The notes beneath the pieces are model-generated. The model searched no databases. It worked only from the letters and a program-made list of their open reading frames with translations, and was not told the DNA's origin. 64,000 bases of DNA, from positions 124,001 through 188,000 of the IMG/VR virus record IMGVR_UViG_3300047321_000238; one strand, given 5' to 3'. Positions 12,637 through 61,420 of this stretch are shown here, in pieces. Positions within the stretch are counted from its first letter, which is position 1. Every line of letters begins with the position of its first letter. A program made the translations under genes and the position numbers.

Positions 12637-12858
12637 ATGGAGTTATTAGATTATATAAAACAAATTCAAATCATAACTCCAAAGCCTGGAGACATTGTAA
12701 TTGTAACAGTTGAAGAAAACATTACAGACAATGTAACAGAACAATTAGCTAAGTGTTTAGTTAGTGAATTCAATGATAGAGGATTGACTAAAGACAACAT
12801 ATCAGTAATTTTATACAAAGGTGATGTAAAGCTTAATGTTATAAGAAAGGAAGAATAG
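12637..12858 (+). CDS. Small protein with ME[LI]L N-terminal tag (MELLDYI)
   Basis: SD AGGAG; starts 1 nt after the upstream stop. Confidence 0.75.
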   Translation: MELLDYIKQIQIITPKPGDIVIVTVEENITDNVTEQLAKCLVSEFNDRGLTKDNISVILYKGDVKLNVIRKEE

Positions 12859-12859
12859 A

Positions 12860-13588
12860 ATGATAGAAGATCAAATTTTAGAATTAATAGATCAAGCGGA
12901 TCCAGCAAATCCTATTGATTTTGTTCATAAGTTAGTAAAACCTTTAGCTAAGAAGAAACTAGATGAATATATCCTTGGATGTGAAGATTGTGATATATGT
13001 AATACAAAGAAAACTATCACTAATGGAAATCCTAATGCAAGTATATTAATCATCGGCGAATCTTCAACAGAAGATCAACAAACAGATTCCTCAGCTGAAA
13101 TTTTTCCTTTCAATAATGAATCAGGGGAATCTTTAGCTAAAGTATTGGAAAAACTTAATGTAAATAAAGATGAGATATTCTTTATGAATAGTGTAAATTG
13201 TTTTCCTCATAGAGAGAACAATGGTATTAAAATTAAGAGAGCTCCTACTAAGACCGAAAGAACTAATTGTAAAGTCTTTTTAGATTATGCAGTTAAGATG
13301 GTTGAGCCTTTATTAATCATATGTTTAGGAGGTGTTGCTACTAATGACATAAACGAAGAAATTGGAAAGCAAAACATATCTAAAATAAGAGGTCAATATT
13401 TCATGTATCGCGGCGTGAATGTAATGCCAACTTATCACCCAGGCTATTTTATTGAACTAGAGAAGTCTGAAAGACTAGATGACGAAACTATATCGAGTTA
13501 TACATGGGACTTCTTTAACGACCTACAGAAAGCATTTACAGACTTACAAAAGCAATATCCAAACTTAAACATAATAAACAAGGAGTGA
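12860..13588 (+). CDS. Uracil-DNA glycosylase family 4 (Fe-S)
   Basis: CEDCDIC, GNPNASILIIGE, NSVNCFP, PTYHPGY. Confidence 0.85.
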   Translation: MIEDQILELIDQADPANPIDFVHKLVKPLAKKKLDEYILGCEDCDICNTKKTITNGNPNASILIIGESSTEDQQTDSSAEIFPFNNESGESLAKVLEKLNVNKDEIFFMNSVNCFPHRENNGIKIKRAPTKTERTNCKVFLDYAVKMVEPLLIICLGGVATNDINEEIGKQNISKIRGQYFMYRGVNVMPTYHPGYFIELEKSERLDDETISSYTWDFFNDLQKAFTDLQKQYPNLNIINKE

Positions 13589-13593
13589 TGCTA

Positions 13594-13791
13594 ATGAGAG
13601 TTCAGTTTATAGAAAGAGATACTACAGAAGTTTTAGAACAACAAATAGGATCATCAGGAATATTTGTTCCAGATAGACATGACCATGTTAACATTGAAAA
13701 TAAAAAATGGTGTGTTGATTCAAGAGAAGTTAAAGATATTCATAAAGGAGAAGTAATTGTTTGGCTATATGATGATACAAGACGATATTAA
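13594..13791 (+). CDS. Hypothetical protein
   Basis: SD AAGGAG 8 nt before ATG 13594. Confidence 0.6.
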   Translation: MRVQFIERDTTEVLEQQIGSSGIFVPDRHDHVNIENKKWCVDSREVKDIHKGEVIVWLYDDTRRY

Positions 13792-13803
13792 GGAGTGATG
13801 TGA

Positions 13804-13983
13804 ATGACTTATGTATCTAACAAAGGTGAAAGAACAATAGGAGAACCAGTAAAAGTATTAGACGTAGTTGCTAATAAAGTCTTTTCTAAGATAAGAAAGA
13901 AAACTATAGTAAACGAAAACGACAGTTCCTTGAAAAAATATATAGCAGTAATTTATGAGATAGAAGGTGAAGAATATCAATAG
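13804..13983 (+). CDS. Small hypothetical protein (59 aa, below track cut-off)
   Basis: SD AAGGAG; open frame MTYVSNKGE... fills the gap. Confidence 0.55.
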   Translation: MTYVSNKGERTIGEPVKVLDVVANKVFSKIRKKTIVNENDSSLKKYIAVIYEIEGEEYQ

Positions 13984-14599
13984 AAACAAAGTTAGATTAA
14001 TTATATTCGAAGGTATTGATTGCTGTGGCAAATCTAGTCAAATGCTTTTAGCTTATGATGAGTTAATAGCTGAAGGTCATAAGGTTATTATGACTAGAGA
14101 ACCAGGGGGCACTCCTTTAGGTGAAAAGATAAGAGAGATATTGAAATCAGATATAGAAATTTCAGATATTGCTGAAGCTTATCTTTTTGCAACAGCAAGA
14201 GCAGAACATAATGTTCAAATCAATGAATGGATTGAAGAAGGATATATCGTATTATGCGATAGACATTTTATATCTTCATATGCTTATCAAGGAATTGAAT
14301 TAGCAAGAGAAGTAAATAGACCAGCTATTAAAGAAATGTTACAAGACAATGCCTATAGAGTATTCTATTTCGATATTAATCATGAAGAATACTTAAGAAG
14401 AAATATGGAAAGAAATGAAGATGAAGATAGATTTGAAAATTTGTTAAATAATTTTGATTACTTTACTAAGGTTAAATATGATTATGATTATTTAGCTGAA
14501 GCCTATAACGCCGTAAAAGTAAAATCTATGAATAAGTCTACTAACGAAATACATGAAGTCGTTATGAAAAACATATACAAGATAATTGAGGAGGAATAA
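13967..14599 (+). CDS. tmk: Thymidylate kinase
   Basis: IIFEGIDCCGKSSQ P-loop, TREPGGT, LCDRH...SSYAYQG. Confidence 0.92.
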   Translation: MKNINRNKVRLIIFEGIDCCGKSSQMLLAYDELIAEGHKVIMTREPGGTPLGEKIREILKSDIEISDIAEAYLFATARAEHNVQINEWIEEGYIVLCDRHFISSYAYQGIELAREVNRPAIKEMLQDNAYRVFYFDINHEEYLRRNMERNEDEDRFENLLNNFDYFTKVKYDYDYLAEAYNAVKVKSMNKSTNEIHEVVMKNIYKIIEEE

Positions 14600-14602
14600 G
14601 AA

Positions 14603-15634
14603 ATGAGTTTTTTAAGTAAAGCAAAAGAAACAGCAAATAAAATAAATGATGTGGCAGGAACTAAACCATCGTTACCAGGTGTTAAGCCATCACTTCCAGG
14701 AGCAAGACCACCAATTCCTGGTGCTAAACCACCAGTAGGAAAGCCACCAGTATTGGGTGCTAAACCATCAATTCCAGGAGGAAAGCCTCTAGTAGTTGCT
14801 CCAAAAGCAGTTGAATCAGTTGTAGAAGCGAAAGTAGAAACAGCTCCATTAAAGAATAACAATCCTTTTATTAAGAAACCAGTTGCAGCTCCTACAGTAA
14901 TAGGAAAGACAGAGGAAATAAAAGAAGAAGTTGTTGTTAAGGTAGAACCAGTTGTAGCAACTGAAACTAAAGTTGAAGAGAATACTGCACAAGAAGTTAT
15001 AGCTGAAAAAGTTGAAGAAATTGCTAAAGAAGAAGTTAAACCAGCAGCAACTAATAAAAGAAGAAGAAAGCCAGCAGGTAAAGCTGCAGCAGAAGAAGCT
15101 GTAGAATCAGACATAGACTCTGGTGCAGATACAATTGAATTTGTAATGCCTAAGTCAGAAGTTAATTTTGAAGATGCTTTATTGTCAATAAGATCAGGTT
15201 TCGTAGATGAAGCTTGGGAAGCATTTAGAACAGAAAATATTACTAGACTTAATGACATATTAATTTCTAATGATATGACAACTACTATGATTAAATCTAC
15301 ATTATCAGAGTTAAGCTTATTAAGAGATTCTACTTGGATTATCTTTAATGACACTAAGACTAATTTCGAAATACTTACAGGTAAAGAACCTGAAGGTACT
15401 ATAGAAAGAATCAAGAAGATGTCAGCTAAGGGTTCTAATCCAGATGAAAGAAAACTTAATGCTACACTTGCAGTAATGAATTATAAAGATGCTAACGGTA
15501 GAACTGTTAATCTTTATGAGTTGTTAGATGAAATGAGAGAAAGATATAACTTTACTAAGAGTTTAATGGATGCAATTTCATATAAAAACAGTGTATTAAT
15601 TACAATGTTAGGTTCATTAAAACTTGAAAAGTAA
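14603..15634 (+). CDS. Hypothetical protein with N-terminal Pro/Gly/Lys repeats and helical C-terminal domain
   Basis: KPSLPGVKPSLPGARPPIPGAKPPVGKPP low-complexity region; SD GAGGAGG. Confidence 0.8.
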   Translation: MSFLSKAKETANKINDVAGTKPSLPGVKPSLPGARPPIPGAKPPVGKPPVLGAKPSIPGGKPLVVAPKAVESVVEAKVETAPLKNNNPFIKKPVAAPTVIGKTEEIKEEVVVKVEPVVATETKVEENTAQEVIAEKVEEIAKEEVKPAATNKRRRKPAGKAAAEEAVESDIDSGADTIEFVMPKSEVNFEDALLSIRSGFVDEAWEAFRTENITRLNDILISNDMTTTMIKSTLSELSLLRDSTWIIFNDTKTNFEILTGKEPEGTIERIKKMSAKGSNPDERKLNATLAVMNYKDANGRTVNLYELLDEMRERYNFTKSLMDAISYKNSVLITMLGSLKLEK

Positions 15635-15661
15635 TTTATAATATAAGGAGGAATTTTATTT

Positions 15662-16387
15662 ATGAATATAGATAGAATCGCAATATCAAAAGAAATCAAG
15701 GACGCTATTATAGCTCCAATTCCAGATGCTTTAATTAAGCAAAGAGAAGGTGGCGGAAAGAAAATGCTATCTTATCTTTCTGGCTCTACAATAACTGATA
15801 TGCTAAATAATGCATTTGGTTATATGTGGTCATGGGAAGTAAAAAAAGAATGGATTGAACAATCAGAACCATCTATTAATAGATGGGTTAATGGTAAAAA
15901 AGAAAATGATCCTAACAAGTGGATTTCAGAAGCTCAAGGACCTGTTGCTCATGTTCTTGGTACAATAACAGTATATTTGAAGAATGGCAATAGTCCACTT
16001 CCTATAACTATATCTAAAGATGGATTTGGTTCAAAATCTGTACTTGGAAAACAAAACGATCAAGAATCAGTTTTCAAAGCAGCAGGAACAGATGCATTAA
16101 AGAAAGCAGCATCTTTATTCGGTATAGGTTTAGAACTATATAGAGATGAAGATGAAAGTGCATACTTCAATGAAATAAACTATGAAGATCCATGGACAGA
16201 TGAAGCTAAAGAAGCTAAGGCTAAAGAGATGGAGTATATAAGTAAATACATTGCAGATTATCAAGTATCTGATGAAGATTTTGATAACTTTGTATATGAA
16301 ACAACTGGAGATAGTTATGATATTACTCCTGACAATATTGATTTAATAGTTAATACTATTAAAGATGGATTAGCAGCAGCAAAATAG
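15662..16387 (+). CDS. Rad52/22-family (Sak-like) single-strand annealing protein
   Basis: GGGKKMLSYLSG...NNAFG..WS, KAAGTDALKKAASLFGIGLELY. Confidence 0.85.
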   Translation: MNIDRIAISKEIKDAIIAPIPDALIKQREGGGKKMLSYLSGSTITDMLNNAFGYMWSWEVKKEWIEQSEPSINRWVNGKKENDPNKWISEAQGPVAHVLGTITVYLKNGNSPLPITISKDGFGSKSVLGKQNDQESVFKAAGTDALKKAASLFGIGLELYRDEDESAYFNEINYEDPWTDEAKEAKAKEMEYISKYIADYQVSDEDFDNFVYETTGDSYDITPDNIDLIVNTIKDGLAAAK

Positions 16388-16438
16388 TATTTAGTAGAGG
16401 GGCCTTTGAGCCCCGATACTTTTAAGGAGGAAATTAAT

Positions 16439-16657: not shown

Positions 16658-17362
16658 ATGGAACTATTAAAACTAAAAGAACAAATTGATACTAGACTTC
16701 CAGCAGGAGATATGTCTGGAATAAAATTAAGAGAATGTAATTGGTCTGTTAAAACAGCGGGCCCTAGTCCAGATGATAATAATAGAACTGAGTTGTTCTT
16801 CCTTGGATGTAAAAAAGCTTTTAATGGCAATCCATGCAAGGGTTGTTTTAATAGTTCAACATGGGATGAATCAAAAGCTCTATGGACGCATGATCCAATT
16901 CTAATGGCAAAACATATTAATAACAATTCACCTAATAAGTATATAACTATAGGTGGAGGAGAACCAACAGACCAAATAAGAAATTTAATTATTTTATGTA
17001 AAGAATTGAAAAAGTATAATTTTCATATTATGATATATACATGGAGAGAATTGAAAAATCTTATCATAAAAGAATATGAATATAAATTAGATCCATATTC
17101 TTTTCAATTTGAAATATATGAATTATTAAAATATATAGATATGGTTGTAGATGGTCAATTTAAAGAAGAAGAACGCTTATGGGATGGTTCTAAAGAAGAT
17201 GGACTAATAAGTTCAGTAGGCTCAGGGAATCAAATCATATGGGACATAAGAAATAATTTAGGATATAGTATGAGAGATTTAAAAGGAATTAAATTAGCAA
17301 AAAATAATGATTTAATTTATTTAGCAAAAAATAAAAATATAGAAAAAATTAATTTATATTAA
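16658..17362 (+). CDS. Radical SAM protein, NrdG/activase-like, with MELL N-terminus
   Basis: CX8CX2C cluster motif, ITIGGGEP, DMVVDG.F, GSGNQ. Confidence 0.8.
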   Translation: MELLKLKEQIDTRLPAGDMSGIKLRECNWSVKTAGPSPDDNNRTELFFLGCKKAFNGNPCKGCFNSSTWDESKALWTHDPILMAKHINNNSPNKYITIGGGEPTDQIRNLIILCKELKKYNFHIMIYTWRELKNLIIKEYEYKLDPYSFQFEIYELLKYIDMVVDGQFKEEERLWDGSKEDGLISSVGSGNQIIWDIRNNLGYSMRDLKGIKLAKNNDLIYLAKNKNIEKINLY

Positions 17363-20320: not shown

Positions 20321-20328
20321 GAGAGGAT

Positions 20329-20350
20329 GGGCTCGCAAGGGCCCCTTTTT
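20329..20350 (+). terminator. Rho-independent terminator
   Basis: GGGCTC-GCAA-GGGCCC then TTTTT. Confidence 0.7.
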
Positions 20351-20353
20351 ATT

Positions 20354-20878
20354 ATGGAAATATTAAATTATATAAATGCTAACAAGCATGAATTCAATGA
20401 AGATTATATGAAGAACAATGCAATTCATAAATCATTAGAAGAATTAAAAGAGTATCTAAAATTACACGCTACATTCTTAAGTAGACCTATATATTGTATA
20501 TATGAATGCTATGATCCAGAAGAAGAAGATGGTTGTTATATAAATATAAATTATTTAACTAATCATGCAGAAGGCCATTTGACAGATGATTATGAAACTG
20601 ATGCAGAAAATAATTTCTTTAATAGCTTACCATGCATAGATGAAGTAACAGAATCAACTTTTGGAATGCAAGGTTTATATAAAAATAAAGACAGAGAACA
20701 TATGACTGTAGATAGTAGAGGTCAAATTACGTATATAGATGTTGACTACTATGAACTTACAAAGAAAGAAGAAATCTGGTATCTTAAAAAGGTTATAAAA
20801 ATACTTTGCGAGTATCCAGCATTTCAAGTGTTAGAATCTCCATGGCATGAAGAAGAACATGAATATGATGATGATTAG
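20354..20878 (+). CDS. Acidic hypothetical protein with MEIL N-terminal tag (MEILNYI)
   Basis: ATG 20354 in frame with track ORF 20327; start chosen by the shared tag; no SD. Confidence 0.7.
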   Translation: MEILNYINANKHEFNEDYMKNNAIHKSLEELKEYLKLHATFLSRPIYCIYECYDPEEEDGCYININYLTNHAEGHLTDDYETDAENNFFNSLPCIDEVTESTFGMQGLYKNKDREHMTVDSRGQITYIDVDYYELTKKEEIWYLKKVIKILCEYPAFQVLESPWHEEEHEYDDD

Positions 20879-32505: not shown

Positions 32506-32790
32506 ATGGAGTTATTAAGTTTAGTTAATTACTTTCAAAGAGGAATTACATTAAATGAAAAACTTAATATTATTACTCAGGAAGCTCGTTATAGAATAAT
32601 TAGTAATGACTTTAAAAATGAAGTTACTATGAAAATCAAAAAAGCATTTGATGATTATAATTATTTTAATTATCGTGATAATCTTATTCCTACAGTTTCA
32701 TTTGATTTATATAAAATCAATATAGATGTAAAACAAATTGAAGCTCCATTGCATCCAAGTCTTACGGGAGGTGAAGGATGGAATTATTAA
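32506..32790 (+). CDS. ME[LI]L-tag protein, array member 1 (MELLSLV)
   Basis: ORF track; starts 1 nt after the upstream stop. Confidence 0.7.
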   Translation: MELLSLVNYFQRGITLNEKLNIITQEARYRIISNDFKNEVTMKIKKAFDDYNYFNYRDNLIPTVSFDLYKINIDVKQIEAPLHPSLTGGEGWNY

Positions 32791-33326
32791 AATATGTTCA
32801 AGAAATAGAAGAAAATATAATAACAATACCAAATGATTATGGACTTGATCCAAGTCGTATACGTAGTGGAATTTCTATTTATGGCACTGGAGGTTCAATA
32901 GTTGGCACTATGAGTAATATTGATTATCAACCTAGTGAAGACATAAGTGGGTTAATTAATACAAATCTTTCTGGTAGTATATCTCTTGCTAATACTTATG
33001 TACCTGGCGAGACAATGACGGGAAGATTAGAAGTACCTGCTTTTGATGATAGAATTATGCTTTCTGACGGTATGAGTTCAGCTTTTACAGCAGCTACTGC
33101 GTTAAGAATGGCTCCTTCTGTTTCTGAAGAGATTTTAGAAGCTATTCAAAATACAATTAGAGAAGCTATTATAGAAGAATTCAGAAGTATACGTGTTTCA
33201 CCAAGCGATACTGTTACTTATACTTATACTCCACCTAATCATATGGAATATATGACCACAAGAATAGATTTAAGAGCTGAACCAGAAACTTCAGCTCTTG
33301 ATGAACCTCCAACGGAGGATGAATAA
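32778..33326 (+). CDS. ME[LI]L-tag protein, array member 2 (MELLKYV)
   Basis: SD GGAGGTG. Confidence 0.75.
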   Translation: MELLKYVQEIEENIITIPNDYGLDPSRIRSGISIYGTGGSIVGTMSNIDYQPSEDISGLINTNLSGSISLANTYVPGETMTGRLEVPAFDDRIMLSDGMSSAFTAATALRMAPSVSEEILEAIQNTIREAIIEEFRSIRVSPSDTVTYTYTPPNHMEYMTTRIDLRAEPETSALDEPPTEDE

Positions 33327-33327: not shown

Positions 33328-33579
33328 GTGGAGATATTAAGGTATATAAAAGATGATTATGTTTATGTTTCTATGTTAGATAGGCTAAAGAATCTTGAGA
33401 TGAAAAACAGTATGATTGAATCTCAATTATGCATATTAATGTCACAATCTAATAATTCATGGGAACACAAAATGAAAATAGATAATGCATTAGCATCTAT
33501 AACAAATGTATTCTTAGAGTTAGGCATAGATTCAAATAAACTTAATCGAATAACAGATGCTTTAAAGGAAGTATTGTAA
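33328..33579 (+). CDS. ME[LI]L-tag protein, array member 3 (GTG start, MEILRYI)
   Basis: SD GGAGGA 8 nt before GTG 33328, in frame with track ORF 33298. Confidence 0.7.
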   Translation: MEILRYIKDDYVYVSMLDRLKNLEMKNSMIESQLCILMSQSNNSWEHKMKIDNALASITNVFLELGIDSNKLNRITDALKEVL

Positions 33580-33580: not shown

Positions 33581-33847
33581 ATGGAGATATTAAATTATAT
33601 AAATACAGAATTAACCAAACGTTTTAATAGTCCAGGAATAACACTTGCTAAAATACCATCAATAAGTAGGATGACATCTACAAATTTAACTAATGCTATT
33701 CAAAATAATTTTGAAAATAAAACATTTTATGTTGGTGATATTGTTATGAATAATGAAAATGGAAATAGAAATATGAATTTTTATATGTATAATGGAACAG
33801 AGTTTGAAATGATTACTCAAGGAGGAGGAATATATGGAATTACTTAG
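33581..33847 (+). CDS. ME[LI]L-tag protein, array member 4 (MEILNYI)
   Basis: Starts 1 nt after the upstream stop. Confidence 0.7.
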   Translation: MEILNYINTELTKRFNSPGITLAKIPSISRMTSTNLTNAIQNNFENKTFYVGDIVMNNENGNRNMNFYMYNGTEFEMITQGGGIYGIT

Positions 33848-34175
33848 TTTTTTAAATAGCTCAAGCATTGAAGATATTCCTCTGCTTGAGTTAGAATCTC
33901 AATTAAAACAATTAAAGCAAACAGTTAGGACAAACTATTTAACAGTTACTTATGGTTCAAGAATTAAACCAATTAAGTGTGTTAGAGAGTATTACTTAAA
34001 TCCACTAACTAAAAAGAAAGTACCTAAAATAAACATTGTAAATGCTTGTACTTCAATACATGGTACATTTGGCATTAAAGATTGTGCCTCCGTTGATTGT
34101 AATAGTTGTCATCGAAAGATGATAGAGAATTACTTTAATGGGGAGGCATATTTAATCAAAAATAATAAAAAATAG
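33834..34175 (+). CDS. ME[LI]L-tag protein, array member 5 (MELLSFL), Cys-rich C-terminus
   Basis: SD GGAGGAGG. Confidence 0.7.
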   Translation: MELLSFLNSSSIEDIPLLELESQLKQLKQTVRTNYLTVTYGSRIKPIKCVREYYLNPLTKKKVPKINIVNACTSIHGTFGIKDCASVDCNSCHRKMIENYFNGEAYLIKNNKK

Positions 34176-48055: not shown

Positions 48056-48175
48056 GTTTTGTTTGCGTACATGCAATTTGAAAATACATAAAAGCAGGTA
48101 TTAATCTACTTTCAATAATAGAGTACCTGTTTTTATATGTTTTTATACATAATACAAACAAAGGAGGGGATCAAA

Positions 48176-51100
48176 ACGGAAAATTATTTATCATTACATT
48201 TACATACTATTAAAAGTATTGGAGATGCCATTTTAAAAATTGATGAGTATATAAAAAAAGCACAAACATATAAGTTAAAAGCTTTAGCTATTACTAATCA
48301 CGGCACAATGTCTGATGTTTTTGATTTCTATAGTAAATGCAAGAAAGCAAACATAAAACCCATAATAGGTTGTGAAGTATATGTTGCAAAAGATAGACTG
48401 CAACAATCTAAGGAGAATATGTATGATTATGACCATTTAGTTTTAATAGCTAAAAATAAGGAAGGTTTTGAAAACCTCCTACAAATTCATAATGATGCCC
48501 AAATAAACGGATTCTATTGTAAGCCTAGAACTGATGCATCGGTTCTACAGCAATACGGTAAAAACATAATTGCATTATCAGCATGTGCAGGAGGATATAT
48601 CCCACAAACAATATTGAAATGCATTAATCATCCAGATCAAGAAGAAGAATTAGTCAAAGAAATCACTGACACTATTTCATTGTATAAAAACATATTCGAT
48701 GATTTCTATTTAGAATTACAACCAGGTGATTTTTCTGATCAAATCATAATTAATTCAGCTTTAGTTGAATTAGCAAAAGAAACTGACACGAAGACAATCA
48801 TAACTAATGATGTTCATTATTTAAATGCAGAGGATTATTTAGCTCATAACATACACGTATGTGCTTCGAGAAAAAAAGAAGCAAGCGAAGATGGAACTAT
48901 CTTATATCCTGATAAGTGCTATTACATGATGAATAACGAAGAATTGATTAACTCACTTAAAGATACAATCTCACTGGATACTATTGAAACATCCGTCAAT
49001 AATATATATAATATAATTGATGTTATAGAAGATTATGATATAGTTCCAGATAAAATATATATGCCTAAATTTGATGTTCCAGTAGGATACACTGAGGATA
49101 GTTGGTTAGAAGATATATGCTTTGAAAAGTTAAATGATATTGCCTATAAATTAGATGACATTACAGAATACACGGAGAGACTCCTGTATGAGTTGGATAC
49201 CATAAAAGAACTAGGATTCAGTGGTTATTTCTTAACTGTAAGAGATTCTATTATGTGGGCAAAGAACAATAAGATTCAAGTTGGACCTGGTAGAGGTTCC
49301 GTATGTGGCAGTTTAGTTGCATACTTAGCAGATATTACTTTAGTAAATCCAATTAAATACGGATTACTTTTTGAAAGATTTATATCTATTTATAGAAAGG
49401 GCTCAGTCCCTGATATAGATACTGATATTCAAGCATCAAGAAGAGATGAAGTATTTAATTATATTTTAACCACACATGGAAAAGATAAATGTTGTTTAGT
49501 TTCAACGTTCTCAGAAAGAAAGGCAAAGGCTGCAATAAAAGATACTGGAAAAGTATATGGAATAGACAAGGAAACTTGCAATTATGTAGCCTCTTTAGTT
49601 CCTACTGTTTATTATACAGACGATGAAGATGGAAACTCAGAAAAGATGACAGACATATCAATAGAAGAAACTATTGAAATTGTTCCAGAGTTTAAAGAAT
49701 ATTACGAAAAATACCCAGACTGGTTGAATTCAGCTATTAAATTAAGTAACATTCCAAAAGCTACTTCTGTTCATGCAGCTGGAACTATTATTTCACCAAT
49801 CCCACTGTATAACAAAATTCCTATGGTAAGAAGTAAAAATGAAGATTTGCTAGCTACTGCTCTTAATTTAAAAGATGCAGAAAACGCTGGCTTTATTAAA
49901 TTTGATTATCTTTCATTATCTACTTTAGGAATCTTTGATAAGATATTAAAACTAATAAAGAAAAATGATTTAAGTTTCATCGATGATGAATATGACGACC
50001 CTGCTGTTTGGGCCATTATAGGTTCTAAATATACTTCAGGATTATTTCAAATTGGTTCAAGTACTTATAAACAAAGAATGCCTAGACTAAAGCCTAAGAC
50101 TATTAAAGAATTAGCAGCTTGTTTAGCATTAGTACGGGGCCCTTGTATCGCGTCTAAGATGGACGAAAAGTATATGCAAATTGTAGAAGGAAAGGCTGAG
50201 ATAGAACTTATCCATCCTATATATGATAATGTATGTAAAGATACTAATGGAGCTTTAATATACCAAGAACAACTGATGAAGATCTGTAATAACATTGGAT
50301 TCTCATTAGAAGAGGGATACAAGATAATGAAGCATGCATCTAAGAAACATTTTGATGAACTAAAAGCTTATGAAGAAGAATTCAAAAAGCTTGCAGATAG
50401 TATCAATATGGACGATGATGTTGCTGATAGAATTTTTAAGATGATAGTAGAATCTGGTTTGTATTCCTTTAATGAATCTCACGCAATAGCTTATGCTATT
50501 TTGACATATATAGGAGCTTATTTAAAACTATATTATCCAAAAGAATTTATGGCAGCTTCTTTAACTAATGCTTATGAAAGAAAAGAAGATGTTGTTGATT
50601 TAATACAAGAGTGTAGACGTCTTGGTATTCAATTCGTAAGTCCTGATATAAATATATCTGATTGGGATTTTGTTCTTGAAGAAGACAATAAGATAAGACT
50701 TGGAATGTGTGCAGTTAAATCATTTGGAGATAAAGCATATCAAGAGATAGTGCTTAAACGGCCATTCAGTTCTATGGAAGACTTCTTAACCAGAATAGTA
50801 AAGAAAGATTGTTCTAAGCGAGCTATTATTCCAGCTATCTTCTCAGGTGCATTTAATGAATTCTATGACACTAGATTAGATGCTTATCTAGATTACTGTA
50901 AAGTAACTGAAACAGAACCGTCTGAAGAATTAACTATTCAAGGCGTAAAAGAAAAGATAAGTGTTAACTCAAGTGATTTTGAATTCGAAGAAGTATTCTT
51001 ACAAACTTGTATAATATCTAATCCAATTAATAATTTTAAACCAATAGGCGTTGAACAAATGTCACCTAGTTCCTCTTTTGGAATACTAGGTTTAATGGAT

Positions 51101-51307
51101 AGAGTAAAGAAGTTTAAAGATAGAAATGGTAATCAAATGGCCTTCTTAAGTATTAGTACTGGAGATGGAGTTTTAGAAGCAGTAATATTTGCAAAACAAT
51201 ATTCTGAATTTAAAAGTTATCTAAAGAAGAATTTAATTTGTAGATATACTCTTAAGAAAAATAAAGAAGATTATATAGTAAATGCAATAGAGCTTTCTGC
51301 AGCATAG
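48176..51307 (+). CDS. dnaE: DNA polymerase III alpha subunit (DnaE) copy 1; start uncertain (ACG 48176 or ATG 48137)
   Basis: PHP HLH...AITNHG, GPGRGS, PDIDTD, KFDYLSL, YQEQLM, FNESHA, C-terminal OB fold. Confidence 0.93.
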   Translation, partial: TENYLSLHLHTIKSIGDAILKIDEYIKKAQTYKLKALAITNHGTMSDVFDFYSKCKKANIKPIIGCEVYVAKDRLQQSKENMYDYDHLVLIAKNKEGFENLLQIHNDAQINGFYCKPRTDASVLQQYGKNIIALSACAGGYIPQTILKCINHPDQEEELVKEITDTISLYKNIFDDFYLELQPGDFSDQIIINSALVELAKETDTKTIITNDVHYLNAEDYLAHNIHVCASRKKEASEDGTILYPDKCYYMMNNEELINSLKDTISLDTIETSVNNIYNIIDVIEDYDIVPDKIYMPKFDVPVGYTEDSWLEDICFEKLNDIAYKLDDITEYTERLLYELDTIKELGFSGYFLTVRDSIMWAKNNKIQVGPGRGSVCGSLVAYLADITLVNPIKYGLLFERFISIYRKGSVPDIDTDIQASRRDEVFNYILTTHGKDKCCLVSTFSERKAKAAIKDTGKVYGIDKETCNYVASLVPTVYYTDDEDGNSEKMTDISIEETIEIVPEFKEYYEKYPDWLNSAIKLSNIPKATSVHAAGTIISPIPLYNKIPMVRSKNEDLLATALNLKDAENAGFIKFDYLSLSTLGIFDKILKLIKKNDLSFIDDEYDDPAVWAIIGSKYTSGLFQIGSSTYKQRMPRLKPKTIKELAACLALVRGPCIASKMDEKYMQIVEGKAEIELIHPIYDNVCKDTNGALIYQEQLMKICNNIGFSLEEGYKIMKHASKKHFDELKAYEEEFKKLADSINMDDDVADRIFKMIVESGLYSFNESHAIAYAILTYIGAYLKLYYPKEFMAASLTNAYERKEDVVDLIQECRRLGIQFVSPDINISDWDFVLEEDNKIRLGMCAVKSFGDKAYQEIVLKRPFSSMEDFLTRIVKKDCSKRAIIPAIFSGAFNEFYDTRLDAYLDYCKVTETEPSEELTIQGVKEKISVNSSDFEFEEVFLQTCIISNPINNFKPIGVEQMSPSSSFGILGLMDRVKKFKDRNGNQMAFLSISTGDGVLEAVIFAKQYSEFKSYLKKNLICRYTLKKNKEDYIVNAIELSAA

Positions 51308-51338: not shown

Positions 51339-51506
51339 ATGGAAATATTAAAACACTTACAAGACGTAGAAAAGGAAATTGAAAAAGAATGGACTGAGAT
51401 ATTATTTTACCGTGTGTGGAGAAGATATGGATACACTACTGGAACTGAAGTTGTAATAGGTAGAAATGGAACTAAATACACAGCAATATCAAGAGATAAA
51501 GAATAG
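51339..51506 (+). CDS. ME[LI]L-tag protein (MEILKHL; 55 aa, below track cut-off)
   Basis: SD AAGGAG; open frame to TAG 51504-51506. Confidence 0.7.
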   Translation: MEILKHLQDVEKEIEKEWTEILFYRVWRRYGYTTGTEVVIGRNGTKYTAISRDKE

Positions 51507-51701: not shown

Positions 51702-52175
51702 GTGGAATTACTTAATTATGTAAATAACATGTATGAGTTTATGGCATTAGGATCCATGGAGAACAAAACAGAAGCTAATATTAAAGAACATATCATATGC
51801 TTCTTTAGTAATGACTATGACAAGTCATGGTGTTCTAACATAAATACAAACATGCCATGCATAACAGAAGCAGAAATAGAAGATGAGTTGTATAACTTAA
51901 ACATATTAATAGCTTATGAGACTTATATAGTAAATAATGGCGGACGTAATTGTGCCTTTTGTTTATTCAGACATAAAGTAACTAGAGAATACTATTATCT
52001 TAAATGCGATATAGATTCAGCTCATGGATTTGAAGGTTATTTTATATTAAACAAATTAGAGAAACTATCTGAGATGTTACCTATAGATGTAAGTGAATCA
52101 TCACAAGCTAAAGCAACTGAAGTAAAAGAAAAGATAAGAGATTATATAAGAGAATATGTTCCTATGCGTGATTAG
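51702..52175 (+). CDS. ME[LI]L-tag protein (GTG start, MELLNYV)
   Basis: SD GGAGG; GTG directly after TAA. Confidence 0.75.
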   Translation: MELLNYVNNMYEFMALGSMENKTEANIKEHIICFFSNDYDKSWCSNINTNMPCITEAEIEDELYNLNILIAYETYIVNNGGRNCAFCLFRHKVTREYYYLKCDIDSAHGFEGYFILNKLEKLSEMLPIDVSESSQAKATEVKEKIRDYIREYVPMRD

Positions 52176-53628: not shown

Positions 53629-53913
53629 ATGAGTGAATTATTAAAACAAGTAAATAAACTATTCCCAAAAGCCAATTTCAAGAATGGAATGGTTGTGGAA
53701 TTAGATACACGAAAAAGAAGATTGTTTTGGGAAGGTCGATTTATTGATGGGACAGGTTATATTCCATTAGGTTATTATGATAACGAATTAAACAATATGG
53801 ATACTATAAATCATACTGACAATATAAATAAAATATATCTATCTCATGATGTTGGATATTTTGAAGACTTTTTTAGAGACGCTAGTTTGACTGAAATTTG
53901 GAGAAGAGAATAA
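53629..53913 (+). CDS. Hypothetical protein (MSELLK start)
   Basis: SD GAGGAG. Confidence 0.7.
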   Translation: MSELLKQVNKLFPKANFKNGMVVELDTRKRRLFWEGRFIDGTGYIPLGYYDNELNNMDTINHTDNINKIYLSHDVGYFEDFFRDASLTEIWRRE

Positions 53914-57070: not shown

Positions 57071-57352
57071 ATGGAAATATTAAAAAGTATCGAAGAAATA
57101 CGAATAGCTAACTGTATAAAGCAAGCTATTGAAGATGGAAAACTTGTTCCTAATGGTAAAAACTTAAGTCGAATTAAGAAACAACTAAGAGAAGAACATG
57201 GACTAATCTTTTTAAATATCATAAGTTCATCAAGGAATGGCCTGCAAGTAATGGCTAAGACAAAAAGTTATAGTTATACATATAATTATAATGGAGATGT
57301 GAAAGAAATAAGTTTAATAGGAGGAATAAGAAAGAATGTTAGTACTAACTAG
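57071..57352 (+). CDS. ME[LI]L-tag protein (MEILKSI)
   Basis: SD AAGGAGG favours ATG 57071. Confidence 0.7.
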   Translation: MEILKSIEEIRIANCIKQAIEDGKLVPNGKNLSRIKKQLREEHGLIFLNIISSSRNGLQVMAKTKSYSYTYNYNGDVKEISLIGGIRKNVSTN

Positions 57353-57647
57353 AAATCTAACTCCTGGTGAAGTGAGAACCTGTAAACTTTCTCGTAAGAT
57401 GATTGTTTACGGGGACTTCTATTACCAAGACACAGAAGATCCTAAGCTATACATTAAAGCTACTGAATATCATAAACTAAAAAAGCAAGAGAAGATAAAT
57501 GCTTTTGATTATTCTAAACTAGAGCAAGCTCAAAGTGAAAAAGAGTATAGACAATATATGATACAAGCTCAACAAGAATACTTAACCGCTACCATTCTCA
57601 GTAAAGAAATTTGCATCAATGGCGAAATTGAAAATACGGAATTATAG
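57336..57647 (+). CDS. Hypothetical protein
   Basis: SD AGGAGG. Confidence 0.7.
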   Translation: MLVLTRNLTPGEVRTCKLSRKMIVYGDFYYQDTEDPKLYIKATEYHKLKKQEKINAFDYSKLEQAQSEKEYRQYMIQAQQEYLTATILSKEICINGEIENTEL

Positions 57648-57655
57648 GGGGAAGT

Positions 57656-60600
57656 ATGAATAGAGACGATTTTAATATAATAGACCACAAACTTTCAAAA
57701 CTTACTAATAAAAAAAGAACTGATACTAAAGGTATAACATTACATTGTTATGCTGATTGGTATGATAATAAATCACAATACGGCGGCTTTGATTTAGTAC
57801 AATCAATAAATACTAATCAAGAGAACTATGGCTTTAACTTCTTGCTTGATCAATATGACATTGTTGAAGCGGTTAAAGAGAGTTCAGTTGCTGATCCATT
57901 TGGTACAAAGAAACCAACATACATTGCTACTAACTTATATGAAAATAAGATTAGTGAGAATACTTTATCTATTTGTATATTCATATCAAAAGAGCACAAC
58001 TATGAAGAGACTGAAAAAGTCCTAGTAAAGTTCTTAGCTTATTTGTTGAATGAATACAAATTAAAGACAGATGATATTTGGAGAGGACATGACTTATCTA
58101 AAGATGATAAGGGCCCAATACAATATCTAGATACTGATATCTTTAAGAAATTACTTAAAGAAGTTGATGACTACATTGCATTTATAAGTGACGATGATAA
58201 CAAAGACAAAGAGTTTGAGTTTGTTTCTCCTTTTAAAAGTGCTGATAACACAACTACAGTTGAAGAAGCTGTTAATAAAATATTTGATACAAATAAAGAT
58301 AAGATAGATGACTATGTTAATCAATTTGAACCATGGGATAAAGAGAAAGCAGAAATTAAACAAGCTGTAGCTAAACCTGAAGTAGGAAACCTAAAGACTA
58401 AGACATTCCCTACTAAGAATAAACTACAATATAAAATTACTAATACACCACCAGGATCTGCAACACATTGTGTTAAGGCTTCTGATAGATTAGAAGGTAT
58501 AGAAACTGAAGAAGATACTTTTGTAGAACCAATCTATCCTGATTTGATAACACCTCCAGGTGGAGAAATCAATATAGCTAACGGTTCATCAGAAACTGCA
58601 GTTCAATCTAGCTCTAGTTCTACTACACCAATATCAGTAGAGGACTTTGAAAAGAGACAAAAGACTTTCGATATGAAAGACTTCTCTAACGTTAAGAAAG
58701 AGACTGTAGGTAGACCTATTAATACAGATGATCCATTTCCAGTAGATGAACAAATTAAGAAACTCGAAGAACATTTTCCTAAAGTTAAAATAGATAAAAC
58801 TACTTTTGATTTTACTGAGGATAACCATCCAGGTTCAGCAATAGGCAAAGCAATGGCTAAAAACTATGCAATGACTTACGATATGGTTAATGAAATAAGT
58901 AAACGTACTGAAAAGAGATTAGTTAAAATTGAAAACAATCTTGCAACAGTAATGCGTAACATGTTTCGAATGTCTTCTAGAGTTAATATTAATTGTGTTT
59001 ATTATGGAGGTCAATCTGTTTATGGTAAATATAAATGTATTAGATGTCTTCATGACAATAGAATAGATGATGGAGCTATAGTAACTATGGACCAATGTCT
59101 ATGTTGTACAAGATACGAACCAATCCTTGGACAAGTCTATGCAATATTAGATGAGACTGGTTCTAATGTATCACAAGTGGTAGATGATCTACAAATGTCT
59201 TATATGGAATTATATGATTATCAAGTATTTAATAATGTTAATGAATACAATACTGCACCTAAGGATGCAAATCTTAAAAAGGATTCTACAGATATTCCAA
59301 AAGAATTTAGAGATACTAAATGGGCGGATACTGCAGAGGAAAAGAAAGCCAAAGCAGAATTAAAAGCTAAACGAGCTGCTGCCGCTAATGTTTCTGGAGA
59401 ACCAGAAGTAACTAAGAAAGATGAAAAGATTCTTATTACTTACGAAGAAGTTAAAGAATACTTAGATACGAAACTTCAAGAAGTTATTATATTAGACTCA
59501 GAGAATAAGCAACTTACTAAAGATGAATATATAATCATCAAGAAGTATGAAATGCTTAAGGCTATTACAGATAAAATAAACGAAGAATCTACTGAAAAGA
59601 AATATAAAGATGATTCAGGAAATGATATAACAAGAGAAGATTACATTAAGCTATTAACAAAGAAATTTAAGGATTCATATGTTAGTGACGAATATTATAA
59701 TGGATTTAAAATGGATTGGACACCTAATCTTTTAGAAACTCATAAAGCTAATATCAATGTTTATGATGTTGAGAAATTAAAAGATGGTAAGTCAGCACAA
59801 ATAGATACAGTTGATCATCAACCATCGCTATCTAGAGATCTGTTTATTGACTCTAGAGAAGAAGCTATTGAGTATGAAAAATTAGAATTCAATATTAAAG
59901 ACTATGACATTGGAGACTTCTCAGGTGGAGTTAACGGTTCATCATCTTCTGGAGGTATATTTGGAGGTATGGGCTCTACAGTGGTAAGAAATAAAATTGT
60001 AGAATATGCTAAAAATGCGGTTACTTTATGTGCAGAAGGGAAAGCTAAATATTCACAAGGTCAACGTATGTTACATGATGATAAAGCTGTTAATGGTATT
60101 AGTTATTGGGATTGTTCTTCATTAGTTCAAGCAGCTTATGAAGCTGGAGGTATTACTGGAGTTACAGGAAATACATGTTCAGAATATCCGTCTTGTTTAG
60201 ATACAAATGGTGGTTTACTTATCCCTATCGCGGAAGTAGATAAAGCTATACCTGGAGATATCGTATGGTTCTATTCAGGTAACAAACCAACCGATCAAGC
60301 AGGACTACAAACTATAGATTATAGTAATGCTAGTTTACTTCATCACGTTGCTATTTATATTGGAGACGGAAAGATTGCTCATGCAAGTGGAGAGAATTCT
60401 ACTCCTAATATTAAGATATCTGATTTATATAGTGAGGCAATAGCTTTTGGTAGACCAAAGGATTTAATTGAATTAGATAGAGCTGCATCTACAGGAGCAA
60501 GTGGACCTGGTGTATGGAATAGAGAAGCTCAAGGAATAGATGATGAATTATGGAATGCATCATCAGTAGCTGATGAACAAGTACCTGCATTTATTGCTAA

Positions 60601-61072
60601 TATGGCTAAGTACGGATATAAAGATGCTATTAATAATATAAGTAAAGAGTTTAATTTCGATCCTTATGTTATAGCAGCTATGGCAACTATTGAAACTACA
60701 GGAAATCCTCATGAAGGTTCTACGTATAAAGGTATACTGCAAGTAGAAAATGGCTCTGAAGATCCAACAACTAATATAAGGCAAGCTCTTGAAGGACTCA
60801 TGGCAAGAAAACCTTACTTAGTACAAAATGGTTGGAGCGAAAATAATATTCACGTATTGGTATCTGCTCATAACTCTGGAGAAGGAACCGTAGGAGGAGC
60901 TAAAAAAGCTAGCAATTTAAATTTAGCATCTTGTAAAATACCAGAGATGGGAGAAGCTTTGTATAACTATGTAAAAGCAACTACGTCTTGGGATCCTATG
61001 GAAAAGAAAACTTACACAACTAAAGTATTAAGAGCATATGCGTTACTTTATTCTCAAAACGCGTTAAGTTAA
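57656..61072 (+). CDS. Large multidomain peptidoglycan hydrolase: Amidase_2-like + Cys-rich domain + NlpC/P60 + SLT-like
   Basis: ITLH...GHDL (amidase-like); WDCSSLV...PGDIVWF...HHVAIYIGDG..AHAS (NlpC/P60); AMATIET...GILQV...SAHNSG (transglycosylase-like). Confidence 0.75.
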   Translation: MNRDDFNIIDHKLSKLTNKKRTDTKGITLHCYADWYDNKSQYGGFDLVQSINTNQENYGFNFLLDQYDIVEAVKESSVADPFGTKKPTYIATNLYENKISENTLSICIFISKEHNYEETEKVLVKFLAYLLNEYKLKTDDIWRGHDLSKDDKGPIQYLDTDIFKKLLKEVDDYIAFISDDDNKDKEFEFVSPFKSADNTTTVEEAVNKIFDTNKDKIDDYVNQFEPWDKEKAEIKQAVAKPEVGNLKTKTFPTKNKLQYKITNTPPGSATHCVKASDRLEGIETEEDTFVEPIYPDLITPPGGEINIANGSSETAVQSSSSSTTPISVEDFEKRQKTFDMKDFSNVKKETVGRPINTDDPFPVDEQIKKLEEHFPKVKIDKTTFDFTEDNHPGSAIGKAMAKNYAMTYDMVNEISKRTEKRLVKIENNLATVMRNMFRMSSRVNINCVYYGGQSVYGKYKCIRCLHDNRIDDGAIVTMDQCLCCTRYEPILGQVYAILDETGSNVSQVVDDLQMSYMELYDYQVFNNVNEYNTAPKDANLKKDSTDIPKEFRDTKWADTAEEKKAKAELKAKRAAAANVSGEPEVTKKDEKILITYEEVKEYLDTKLQEVIILDSENKQLTKDEYIIIKKYEMLKAITDKINEESTEKKYKDDSGNDITREDYIKLLTKKFKDSYVSDEYYNGFKMDWTPNLLETHKANINVYDVEKLKDGKSAQIDTVDHQPSLSRDLFIDSREEAIEYEKLEFNIKDYDIGDFSGGVNGSSSSGGIFGGMGSTVVRNKIVEYAKNAVTLCAEGKAKYSQGQRMLHDDKAVNGISYWDCSSLVQAAYEAGGITGVTGNTCSEYPSCLDTNGGLLIPIAEVDKAIPGDIVWFYSGNKPTDQAGLQTIDYSNASLLHHVAIYIGDGKIAHASGENSTPNIKISDLYSEAIAFGRPKDLIELDRAASTGASGPGVWNREAQGIDDELWNASSVADEQVPAFIANMAKYGYKDAINNISKEFNFDPYVIAAMATIETTGNPHEGSTYKGILQVENGSEDPTTNIRQALEGLMARKPYLVQNGWSENNIHVLVSAHNSGEGTVGGAKKASNLNLASCKIPEMGEALYNYVKATTSWDPMEKKTYTTKVLRAYALLYSQNALS

Positions 61073-61114
61073 GTTATTAGCTATTAAAAATATAATCAAA
61101 CAGGAGGTTTGCTT

Positions 61115-61420
61115 GTGGAAATTTTAAGTAGTATTAACTACGGCAGATGTTTGAATTATCATAATGTGCACGAAGAATGTGATTTATGTTGCTGTGAGTG
61201 CACCAGCAGATGTGATAAGTGTTGTAAGATAATTAATCATTTGGATAATAGGCATGATTGTGGGAACTTCTATAACGTAGTTGACTTCCATAATAAACTA
61301 TTAAAGCAAACTCTTTTCATTAAAGAGGAAATGAAAAGACTCAATGATACTAAAAAGAGATTTGCACAAAGAGATTTAGGCACAATACAAATCATAAAAA
61401 AGATAACAAAAGAAAGGTAG
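61115..61420 (+). CDS. ME[LI]L-tag, Cys-rich protein (GTG start, MEILSSI)
   Basis: SD AGGAGG 7 nt before GTG 61115. Confidence 0.65.
   Translation: MEILSSINYGRCLNYHNVHEECDLCCCECTSRCDKCCKIINHLDNRHDCGNFYNVVDFHNKLLKQTLFIKEEMKRLNDTKKRFAQRDLGTIQIIKKITKER

What the first reader, a model, noticed from the sequence alone, without database searches (positions are those of the whole stretch)
12637..61420. Thirteen unrelated ORFs share an N-terminal tag M-E-[LI]-L-x-(Y)-hydrophobic: candidate protein sorting system
Seen: starts at 12637 MELLDYI, 16658 MELLKLK, 20354 MEILNYI, 32506 MELLSLV, 32778 MELLKYV, 33328 MEILRYI, 33581 MEILNYI, 33834 MELLSFL, 51339 MEILKHL, 51507 MEILKYL, 51702 MELLNYV, 57071 MEILKSI and 61115 MEILSSI; weaker variants at 11285 (MEINKII) and 53629 (MSELLKQV). 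Past about residue 10 the proteins show no similarity I can see. Codons vary synonymously: Glu GAA x9 / GAG x4, Leu4 TTA x11 / CTT x2, starts ATG and GTG. That argues for selection on the peptide rather than a DNA repeat. Six start 0-1 nt after an upstream stop. Known: T4 internal proteins use a roughly 10-aa N-terminal capsid-targeting sequence to load diverse small proteins into heads, and ClpX recognises short terminal tags. Inference: this is a phage-wide address label for virion packaging and injection, for the encoded ClpXP or Ycf46-like AAA ATPase, or for another compartment. I do not recognise it as described.
Basis: partly seen in the sequence, partly recalled or inferred. Interest (0 to 1): 0.9.

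Follow-up and report, generated by a model that had tools for sequence, protein, structure and literature searches.

The report
Shared N-terminal tag on phage proteins
An uncultured 248-kb jumbo phage starts about one in five of its genes, mostly small lineage-specific proteins of unrelated sequence, with the same eight-residue peptide, which behaves like a portable address label whose reader is still unknown.

Summary
All 13 ME[LI]L starts exist (13 of 79 genes; 0.1 expected; P about 2e-22). They are the core of a longer motif, M-(0-2 residues)-E-[LIV]-L-x-[YHF]-[ILV]-[NQ], predicted to be a short helix. The window is part of IMG/VR contig UViG_3300047321_000238 (247,883 bp). In the 141 kb of it that I could read, 41 genes carry the tag, in about 30 unrelated sequence families. 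One array holds some 20 tagged small genes beside anti-defence genes. The full motif occurs 27 times in 41,613 residues, 26 of them in the first 12 residues.

The tag is an add-on. The array's core domain has many homologues elsewhere that start just after the tag position. Orthologues of the tagged radical-SAM enzyme mostly lack it. Glu2 is invariant while its codon varies freely, so selection acts on the peptide. Codons 3-4 nevertheless show an extra NTA-TTA bias.

Tags are confined to a sub-clade of roughly 250-kb phages; close relatives with the same core genes have none. Tagged genes are mostly insertions between core genes.

Function is inferred: a docking peptide for one shared partner. 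T4-like capsid targeting is the best analogue. ClpXP, translation-level and recombination explanations remain open.

The parts
12637..12858 (+). tagged ORF, 73 aa, starts MELLDYI; 1 nt after the stop of the resolvase-like gene
   Evidence: no orthologue at the syntenic site of the nearest relative
16658..17362 (+). tagged radical-SAM enzyme, 234 aa (weakest tag: only M-E-L-L fits)
   Evidence: Pfam Fer4_12/Radical_SAM; most of 120 listed homologues have other N-termini; AF2 gives helix 2-7 with low pLDDT, then coil
20354..20878 (+). tagged ORF, 174 aa, full motif; begins right after a terminator-like hairpin
   Evidence: insertion relative to L143, where the two flanking genes are 75 nt apart
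32506..32790 (+). first of five consecutive tagged ORFs, 94 aa
   Evidence: no family hit
32778..33326 (+). second of the run, 182 aa, overlaps its upstream neighbour by 13 nt
33328..33579 (+). third of the run, 83 aa, GTG start
33581..33847 (+). fourth of the run, 88 aa, full motif (…NYIN)
33834..34175 (+). fifth of the run, 113 aa; Leu4 encoded by CTT
51339..51506 (+). tagged mini-ORF, 55 aa, first of three after DnaE
   Evidence: absent from relatives L002 and L125
51507..51701 (+). tagged mini-ORF, 64 aa; start abuts the upstream stop
51702..52175 (+). tagged ORF, 157 aa, GTG start. The syntenic gene in relative L002 starts MELISLY but shows no detectable similarity otherwise
57071..57352 (+). 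tagged ORF, 93 aa; the only small tagged ORF with a recognisable orthologue (44% identity, also tagged)
61115..61420 (+). tagged Cys-rich ORF, 101 aa, GTG start; resembles in type the Cys-rich tagged mini-proteins of the arrays
53629..53913 (+). offset variant (M-S-E-L-L-K-Q-V-N), 94 aa; same form as the MSxELL and MAELL members of the array
11285..12001 (+). weak variant (V-E-I-N-K-I-I) on a RecA/Sak4-like protein, 238 aa; the N-termini of its orthologues differ
   Evidence: Pfam; orthologues also in a tag-free relative, so no specific link to the tag

Best explanation
The ME[LI]L starts are the core of a portable N-terminal recognition peptide: M-(0-2 residues)-E-[LIV]-L-x-[YHF]-[ILV]-[NQ]. 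It is a short amphipathic helix that a sub-clade of roughly 250-kb jumbo phages of Bacillota-type hosts places at the very start of many unrelated, mostly small and lineage-specific accessory proteins.

Shown:
- The tag is strictly N-terminal.
- It is under peptide-level purifying selection.
- It is not part of the folds it precedes.
- Wider homologues of the same domains lack it.
- It is concentrated in a hyperplastic gene array next to anti-defence genes.
- In the source lineage it has spread to genes inserted between core genes.

Inferred: all tagged proteins are read by one common partner through this helix. My best guess for the partner is the prohead core or scaffold. The tag would then load a changeable set of small host-takeover or anti-defence proteins into the virion for co-injection, as the capsid targeting sequence does for T4 internal proteins. 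The confidence figure applies to 'peptide-level docking tag for a shared partner'. I give the capsid-targeting guess alone about 0.3.
For: N-terminal specificity and enrichment:
- 13 of 79 window genes against 0.1 expected.
- The full motif occurs 27 times in 41,613 residues of the source genome, 26 within the first 12 residues and none truly internal.
- It occurs 0 times in 2,909 control ORFs.

Unrelated carriers:
- 41 tagged genes fall into 32 BLASTP families.
- They include an alpha/beta core family, Cys-rich mini-proteins, a DUF444-like protein, membrane proteins and a radical-SAM enzyme.
- An HMM of the core family matches the window proteins only over the first 10-25 residues.

Add-on nature:
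- Of 150 listed relatives of the core domain among 1.84 billion proteins, 38 start with the tag.
- About 110 align only from profile position 12-22, beginning at their own residue 2-5.
- Radical-SAM orthologues have variable N-termini, and only a few lineages carry the tag.
- AF2 puts the tag in a short helix with pLDDT about 55-58 on two different, otherwise confident folds.

Selection on the peptide:
- The tag columns are the most conserved in 38 core-family representatives that differ by more than 50%.
- Glu2 is never Asp, while its codon is 25 GAA / 14 GAG. Positions 5-8 use synonymous codons at genome frequencies.

Biology compatible with a T4-like system:
- The array sits beside Apyc1, Tad8 and NADAR-type genes.
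- Tagged genes are lineage-specific insertions: 3 of 9 have orthologues against 39 of 47 untagged genes, P = 0.005.
- T-even internal proteins are described as a highly diverse set of defence proteins that share only a capsid targeting sequence (PMC3012670).
- The N-terminal 30 residues of P1 DarB target a reporter to capsids (PMC9024508).
Against: - No partner has been identified and no localisation data exist.
- No conserved protease cleavage site follows the tag.
- Some carriers are odd cargo for a capsid: a 63-aa two-helix membrane protein and a radical-SAM enzyme.
- Most tagged genes lie in the long + strand block with replication and nucleotide-metabolism genes, not in the block that holds the terminase. 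Four tagged genes do lie in the minus-strand blocks.
- Codon 3 is NTA in 35 of 39 tags. Codon 4 is TTA in 36 of 39, against 57% genome-wide. A nucleotide- or codon-level constraint is therefore superimposed, and the L/I/V choice at residue 3 is exactly what NTA would give.
- Only 57% of the genome was read.
Confidence: 0.6

Rival explanations
1. The tag is a degradation or adaptor-docking signal for the phage's own ClpXP, or another AAA+ machine. It would give timed turnover of accessory proteins or deliver their bound targets to the protease.
For: ClpP and a ClpX-like ATPase are encoded together in the window. The tag is terminal, exposed and helical. Any protein class could carry a degron, which suits the mixed carriers.
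Against: ClpP, ClpX and the 555-aa AAA ATPase all have orthologues in relatives with no tags. By my own knowledge of the published ClpX N-terminal signal classes, those contain basic residues, whereas this tag has an invariant Glu. That comparison was not tested here.
Confidence: 0.13
2. The tag is a translation-level element: an optimal start-proximal mRNA or nascent-peptide sequence (early-elongation ramp, reinitiation aid or operator of a translational repressor) that is copied onto accessory genes.
For: Codons 3-4 are biased to NTA TTA beyond genome usage. Positions 5-7 read K/N-Y-I, the class of motif that raised protein yield at codons 3-5 in E. coli reporters (PMC6920384). Tagged genes abut the upstream stop more often (9 of 13 against 22 of 65, P = 0.03).
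Against: Glu2, Leu4 and Asn8 are conserved as amino acids with free synonymous choice at Glu, Tyr, Ile and Asn. The tag tolerates 1-2 extra residues after Met, whereas the reporter effect was position-specific. Most tagged genes have normal Shine-Dalgarno sequences. Any AT-rich codons would serve an unstructured start, and untagged genes start MS, MK or MN. The tag is the most conserved block across core-family members from phages of 24% and 31% GC.
Confidence: 0.12
3. Passive hitch-hiking. The first 20-25 nt are a recombination microhomology or a duplicated 5' gene end through which cassettes are exchanged or new genes are born. The peptide itself does nothing.
For: Tagged genes are lineage-specific insertions and tandem arrays. 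Some tags are nearly identical over about 24 nt. A non-homologous gene at the same site in a relative is also tagged.
Against: Similarity begins exactly at the start codon and upstream DNA is unrelated. Synonymous sites at Glu2 and positions 5-8 are at equilibrium while the amino acids are fixed. The tag is better conserved than the domain behind it in proteins under 50% identical. Isolated tagged genes have no second tag downstream to serve as the other crossover point.
Confidence: 0.08
4. The tag is a leader or localisation helix of another kind: removed by the phage's papain-like C1A peptidase, or a short membrane- or compartment-targeting helix.
For: A C1A peptidase gene lies just upstream of clpP in the source. 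It has a 68%-identical orthologue in the second tag-rich genome and was not found at the syntenic locus of a tag-free relative. The helix is amphipathic.
Against: The co-occurrence rests on three genomes. The peptidase family is common in Bacillota. There is no conserved cleavage motif. The tag is acidic or neutral, unlike known short membrane-targeting helices (own knowledge). No microcompartment shell genes appear in the Pfam lists for the gene calls I read.
Confidence: 0.07

Closest known systems
Capsid targeting sequence (CTS) of T4 and T-even internal proteins
   Same: A short N-terminal peptide is the only thing shared by a highly diverse, fast-changing set of small accessory or defence-countering proteins (PMC3012670). 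The peptide is portable: it works on foreign proteins in T4. Here the tag is also about 8-10 residues, strictly N-terminal, and sits on unrelated small proteins clustered near anti-defence genes.
   Different: No sequence relationship was tested or claimed. No conserved cleavage site follows the tag. Far more genes carry it (at least 41, about 19% of ORFs read, against a handful in T4), including enzymes and membrane proteins. Presence in virions is unknown. The phage belongs to a different lineage; by terminase its nearest cultured relatives are Moorella phage MTATph1 and the Bacillus 0305phi8-36 group.
N-terminal packaging signal of phage P1 DarB
   Same: An N-terminal segment suffices to send a reporter into the capsid, and the cargo counters host defence (PMC9024508).
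   Different: The P1 signal is about 30 residues on a few very large proteins and is not a recurrent motif across dozens of genes.
Encapsulation peptides of bacterial microcompartments
   Same: Short amphipathic helices at a protein terminus, attached to unrelated enzymes, which address them to one protein shell (PMC4594438 and PMC12339742).
   Different: Those peptides are longer and joined by a disordered linker. No shell genes were seen in the parts of this genome that I read. The carriers here are not metabolic pathway enzymes.
N-terminal ClpX recognition signals
   Same: A terminal, exposed short motif on unrelated substrates, and the phage encodes ClpXP.
   Different: The published classes (own knowledge) contain basic residues. 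ClpXP is also kept by relatives that have no tags.

Membership tests
T4-type capsid targeting sequence system | Short N-terminal peptide shared by otherwise unrelated small proteins in hyperplastic loci | tested here: met
   41 tagged genes in 32 BLASTP families, with arrays of 10-20 genes
T4-type capsid targeting sequence system | Tag is followed by a conserved prohead-protease cleavage site and is removed | tested here: not met
   No conserved residue after position 8 in 39 source tags or 38 family representatives. Actual processing cannot be tested by sequence.
T4-type capsid targeting sequence system | Tagged proteins are present inside virions and are ejected | not testable with these tools
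   Uncultured phage; no proteome
T4-type capsid targeting sequence system | Phage has a scaffold core and prohead protease that bind the tag | not tested
   Only part of the structural block was read (terminase, Cpn10)
ClpX N-terminal degron | Presence of the tag tracks presence of the protease | tested here: not met
   ClpP and ClpX orthologues (59% identity) are in contig 148940, which has 0 tags among 86 ORFs
ClpX N-terminal degron | Motif matches a described signal class | not tested
   Compared from memory only: the described classes are basic, whereas this tag has an invariant Glu
Ordinary paralogous gene family | Homology along the protein, not only at the N-terminus | tested here: not met
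   True for 10-13 array members only. The rest show no BLASTP or HMM similarity beyond the tag. Carriers include Pfam families of different folds. Fold-level homology among the small ORFans was not tested.
Microcompartment encapsulation peptide | Shell protein genes present; helix joined to the cargo by a linker | tested here: inconclusive
   No shell Pfam families in the gene calls of the sampled regions. The host genome is unknown. A linker is seen in the radical-SAM model but not in the core family.
Sec, Tat or lipoprotein signal peptide | Basic n-region followed by a hydrophobic core of 10 or more residues | tested here: not met
   Read directly from the sequences: Glu at position 2, only 3-4 hydrophobic residues, polar position 8
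Double-glycine or RiPP leader peptide | Conserved cleavage motif at the leader end and short core peptides | tested here: not met
   No Gly-Gly or other fixed site. Carriers are 43-234 aa and include folded domains.

The most novel reading that the evidence does not exclude
The tag is the address of a phage-wide protein-sorting or licensing system with no known counterpart. One phage- or host-encoded reader (not ClpXP, and not necessarily the capsid) recognises an eight-residue N-terminal helix. A protein's fate (location, stability or activity) depends on carrying it. Newly acquired or newly born genes become useful to the phage only after they gain the tag. That would explain why lineage-specific insertions carry it and why a conserved enzyme's N-terminus has drifted into it in some lineages.
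Probability: 0.25. Interest if true: 0.9.

Novelty: new variant of a known kind. Interest (0 to 1): 0.8.

Why it matters
If the tag is an address label, it marks at a glance the accessory arsenal of a whole clade of uncultured jumbo phages: dozens of small proteins of unknown function, several next to known anti-defence genes. It would also give a simple handle for finding what they do and where they go.

It would be only the second clear case, after the T-even internal proteins, of a short portable N-terminal peptide shared by unrelated phage proteins, and at about ten times the scale. An eight-residue tag that sends arbitrary proteins to one destination would be useful for protein delivery by phages.

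The data also show a tag in the act of spreading. It is absent in close relatives, confined to one array in others, and scattered through the replication module in this phage. That makes the evolution of protein targeting signals directly testable.

Tried and rejected
- Megablast of 24 kb against cultured phages gave one irrelevant 214-bp hit.
It served only as a control and revealed one tagged gene outside the window.
- The 12-member family alignment was too diverged for the search for related loci. A tighter alignment found only the source contig.
- The word-indexed search with the family profile returned only 7 proteins, so it could not be used for phylogenetic profiling.
- The core-domain model has no PDB fold match (best E = 0.8). 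The viral fold library was unavailable.
- Pfam and PHROGs gave nothing for most tagged ORFs.
- Rfam found nothing in the 1.1-kb non-coding stretch before the array. The promoter scan was no better than shuffles.
- GTDB genomes hold neither the radical-SAM family nor the exact tag DNA.
- One exact-protein look-up failed for the minus-strand DnaE.
- Charge and pI do not separate tagged from untagged small proteins.
- Rejected: chance or AT-richness; one homologous family; a DNA repeat that includes upstream sequence.
- I first took the in-frame offsets of 3 and 6 nt as evidence against an RNA motif. I withdrew that argument, because any insertion after the start codon must be in frame to keep the protein.
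Full report
**Observation.** Each opens a + strand ORF of 55-234 aa with M/V-E-[LI]-L. The codon counts, start codons and the six 0-1-nt junctions are also correct. With 79 + strand genes, 0.09-0.13 such starts are expected and 13 are seen (binomial P about 2e-22). None of 449 internal Met residues is followed by E[LI]L. The degenerate DNA pattern occurs 21 times on the + strand. Thirteen are these gene starts, and the other eight lie out of frame before ORFs of 34 aa or fewer. BLASTP of residues 11 onward finds nothing significant among the 15 proteins. Most have no Pfam or PHROG match. The exceptions are a radical-SAM enzyme (16658) and a RecA/Sak4-like protein (11285).

**What the window is.** The window is bases 124,001-188,000 of IMG/VR contig UViG_3300047321_000238, which is 247,883 bp with 31% G+C. 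This is a jumbo phage. It encodes ClpP/ClpX, gyrase, a sigma factor, RecA, NrdD, an NAD ligase, two DnaE-type polymerases and an endolysin with choline-binding repeats. By terminase its nearest cultured relatives are Moorella phage MTATph1 (43%) and the Bacillus 0305phi8-36 group. I read 141 kb of the contig (42.4-100.6 kb and 114.6-197.9 kb) through further loci. Genes run on the + strand from about 53 to 185 kb. The flanking minus-strand blocks hold the terminase and Cpn10.

**The motif is longer and far more common than reported.** At 68.6-75.7 kb lies an array of about 20 genes of roughly 100-115 aa. Nearly all begin M-(0-2 residues)-E-[LIV]-L-x-[YH]-[IV]-N. Further tagged genes lie at 76.9, 78.8 and 90.6 kb. 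One sits two genes from the terminase, and three sit in the minus block beyond 185 kb. In all, 41 tagged genes were found among about 215 ORFs. They fall into 32 BLASTP families, the largest with 10 members (13 at HMM level). Carriers include:
- an alpha/beta 'core' family;
- Cys-rich mini-proteins;
- a DUF444-like protein;
- two membrane proteins;
- the radical-SAM enzyme.

The full motif E[LIV]L-x-[YHF]-[ILV]-[NQ] occurs 27 times in 41,613 residues. Twenty-six occurrences are within the first 12 residues. One is at index 16 of an over-long ORF call, and none is internal.

**The tag is an add-on.**
- A profile of the core family, searched against 1.84 billion representative proteins, found 158 relatives.
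- Of the 150 listed, 38 start with the tag.
- About 110 align only from profile position 12-22, beginning at their own residue 2-5. The same domain is therefore widespread without the tag.
- Within the 38 tagged representatives, the tag columns are the best conserved in the whole protein: E 38/38, L4 38/38, [ILV]7 38/38, N8 29/38. I selected these 38 with a pattern that required the E, L and [ILV]7 positions, so only the N8 count is free of that selection.
- The radical-SAM enzyme has 389 homologues, many on 226-259-kb contigs. Their N-termini before a conserved block vary. Only the source and a few others read as the tag, or nearly so.
- AlphaFold2 places the tag in a short helix of low confidence (pLDDT about 55-58) in front of otherwise well-predicted bodies. 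This holds for both the core family (helix 3-12; overall pLDDT 84) and the radical-SAM enzyme (helix 2-7, then coil).

**Peptide or nucleotide.**
- Upstream DNA is unrelated apart from Shine-Dalgarno sequences, and similarity starts at the start codon.
- Over 39 source tags, Glu is GAA 25 / GAG 14. That is more GAG than the genome's 15%, and Glu is never Asp.
- Lys5, Tyr6, Ile7 and Asn8 use synonymous codons at genome frequencies.
- Position 7 alternates among Ile, Val and Leu codons.
- Three tags encode Leu4 by CTT instead of TTA.

These points indicate selection on amino acids. However, codon 3 is NTA in 35 of 39 tags, and codon 4 is TTA in 36 of 39 against 57% genome-wide. The string GARNTATTA occurs 83 times in the 141 kb, 40 of them in frame at gene starts. 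Some codon- or RNA-level constraint therefore sits on top of the peptide signal, and I cannot explain it. The in-frame offsets do not discriminate between the two levels, since any insertion after the start codon must preserve the frame.

**Distribution.**
- In 79 unrelated viral loci (1.46 Mb, 2,411 ORFs), 0.33% of ORFs start ME[LI]L and none has the full motif.
- In 21 loci of clade relatives (498 ORFs; core proteins 45-70% identical), 2 start ME[LI]L and none has the full motif.
- One relative with 59-70% identical ClpX, DnaE and radical-SAM proteins (contig 148940) has no tag among 86 ORFs and no other recurrent N-terminus.
- Tag-rich relatives do exist. Three short metagenome contigs of 24% G+C have 12 of 12 consecutive genes tagged.
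- A complete 258,779-bp phage (ENA ERZ18242522 NODE_22) has a syntenic array with 10 tagged genes before its Apyc1 gene. Its replication region has no inserted tagged ORFs.
- The array thus looks ancestral to a sub-clade, and the scattering through the replication module is specific to the source lineage.
- Exact DNA for one common tag version occurs only in the source in IMG/VR, apart from one chance hit. It occurs nowhere in 185,579 reference genomes.

**Tagged genes are accessory insertions.** Where the nearest relative (contig 175595) can be aligned, 39 of 47 untagged window genes have an orthologue but only 3 of 9 tagged ones do (Fisher P = 0.005). The flanking core genes are adjacent in the relatives. 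The gene after DnaE is tagged in both phages yet shows no detectable similarity. Tagged genes abut the upstream stop more often than untagged ones (9 of 13 against 22 of 65; P = 0.03). The array lies next to genes with Anti-Pycsar Apyc1, Tad8 and NADAR-type Pfam hits.

**Mechanism.** A short, exposed, strictly N-terminal helix is conserved more strongly than the domains behind it, and is attached to unrelated proteins. The simplest explanation is a docking signal read by one shared partner.

The closest known case is the capsid targeting sequence of T-even internal proteins. A review describes those proteins as a highly diverse set of defence proteins sharing only that sequence (PMC3012670). 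The P1 DarB N-terminal signal is similar in principle (PMC9024508). On that analogy I favour loading of accessory proteins into the virion, at about 0.3. Several points count against it: no conserved cleavage site, odd cargo such as membrane proteins and a radical-SAM enzyme, and the position of most tagged genes in the replication-side block.

ClpXP and the 555-aa AAA ATPase are kept by tag-free relatives, so nothing ties them to the tag. A papain-like C1A peptidase lies just upstream of clpP. It has an orthologue in the second tag-rich genome and was not seen at the syntenic locus of the tag-free relative. This is a weak lead only, because the family is common in Bacillota.

A translation-level role is kept alive by the NTA-TTA bias and by the resemblance of positions 5-7 to the K/N-Y/I motif that raised yield at codons 3-5 in E. 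coli reporters (PMC6920384). It fits poorly with invariant Glu, Leu and Asn and with the tolerated offsets.

Pure hitch-hiking through recombination fits the insertion pattern. It does not fit the sharp boundary at the start codon or the equilibrium synonymous sites.

**Novelty.** No paper in the library contains any of six common tag strings, and no family library describes the carriers. The idea of a portable N-terminal tag on hyperplastic phage proteins is known from T4. This motif, its scale (about 19% of ORFs read), its clade and its visible spread are new. Membership of the T4-type system is not established. One defining feature is met, one is not met, and two could not be tested.

**Limits.**
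- 43% of the source genome is unread.
- Gene starts were chosen by simple rules.
- The small ORFans were compared by sequence, not by fold.
- All statements about function are inference.

Noticed in passing
window 20329-20353: A terminator-like GC hairpin and T-run end immediately before the ATG of tagged gene 20354, which has no Shine-Dalgarno sequence. An alternative in-frame ATG at 20327 would put the hairpin inside the coding region.
   Followed up: partly
L131 471-5336 (source contig about 115.1-120.0 kb, just upstream of the window): An array of 16 tRNA genes, two of them with odd anticodon loops, in a 5-kb stretch almost free of protein genes.
   Followed up: no
L135/L136 (source contig about 81-95 kb); L244 17627-18406: A cluster of counter-defence-type genes next to the tagged array, with Pfam hits to Anti-Pycsar Apyc1, Tad8 and NADAR-DarT1. 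ABC-transporter parts, a GGDEF protein, NAPRTase and a SpoIIID-like regulator lie nearby.
   Followed up: no
window 61519-63891 (-), continuing beyond the window (L157 8918-12373): A second DnaE-type polymerase (1,151 aa in full) on the opposite strand, only 29% identical to the first (48137-51307). It marks the switch from the + strand block to a minus-strand block.
   Followed up: partly
L133 6444-7537 and L244 7946-9097: A non-coding stretch of about 1.1 kb precedes the tagged array in both tag-rich genomes. It has no Rfam match and no clear promoter signal.
   Followed up: partly
L131 8540-9259 (source contig about 123.2-123.9 kb): A papain-like C1A peptidase gene lies directly upstream of clpP-clpX. 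It is present in the second tag-rich genome (68% identity) and was not found at the syntenic locus of a tag-free relative.
   Followed up: partly
L245 2735-3664, 17046-17828, 19924-20735: In the 258.8-kb relative, LAGLIDADG-type genes sit inside or beside the RecA and SNF2-helicase genes, which appear split. The source window has intact versions.
   Followed up: no
L133 12036-12532: A 43-aa tagged ORF is followed by a family member whose tag is reached only from an upstream alternative start. This looks like a decaying or rearranged array member.
   Followed up: no
window 8408-9655 and L136 19997-20264: The phage encodes a sigma-70-family factor and a SpoIIID-like protein, which suggests interference with host sporulation or stationary-phase transcription.
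   Followed up: no
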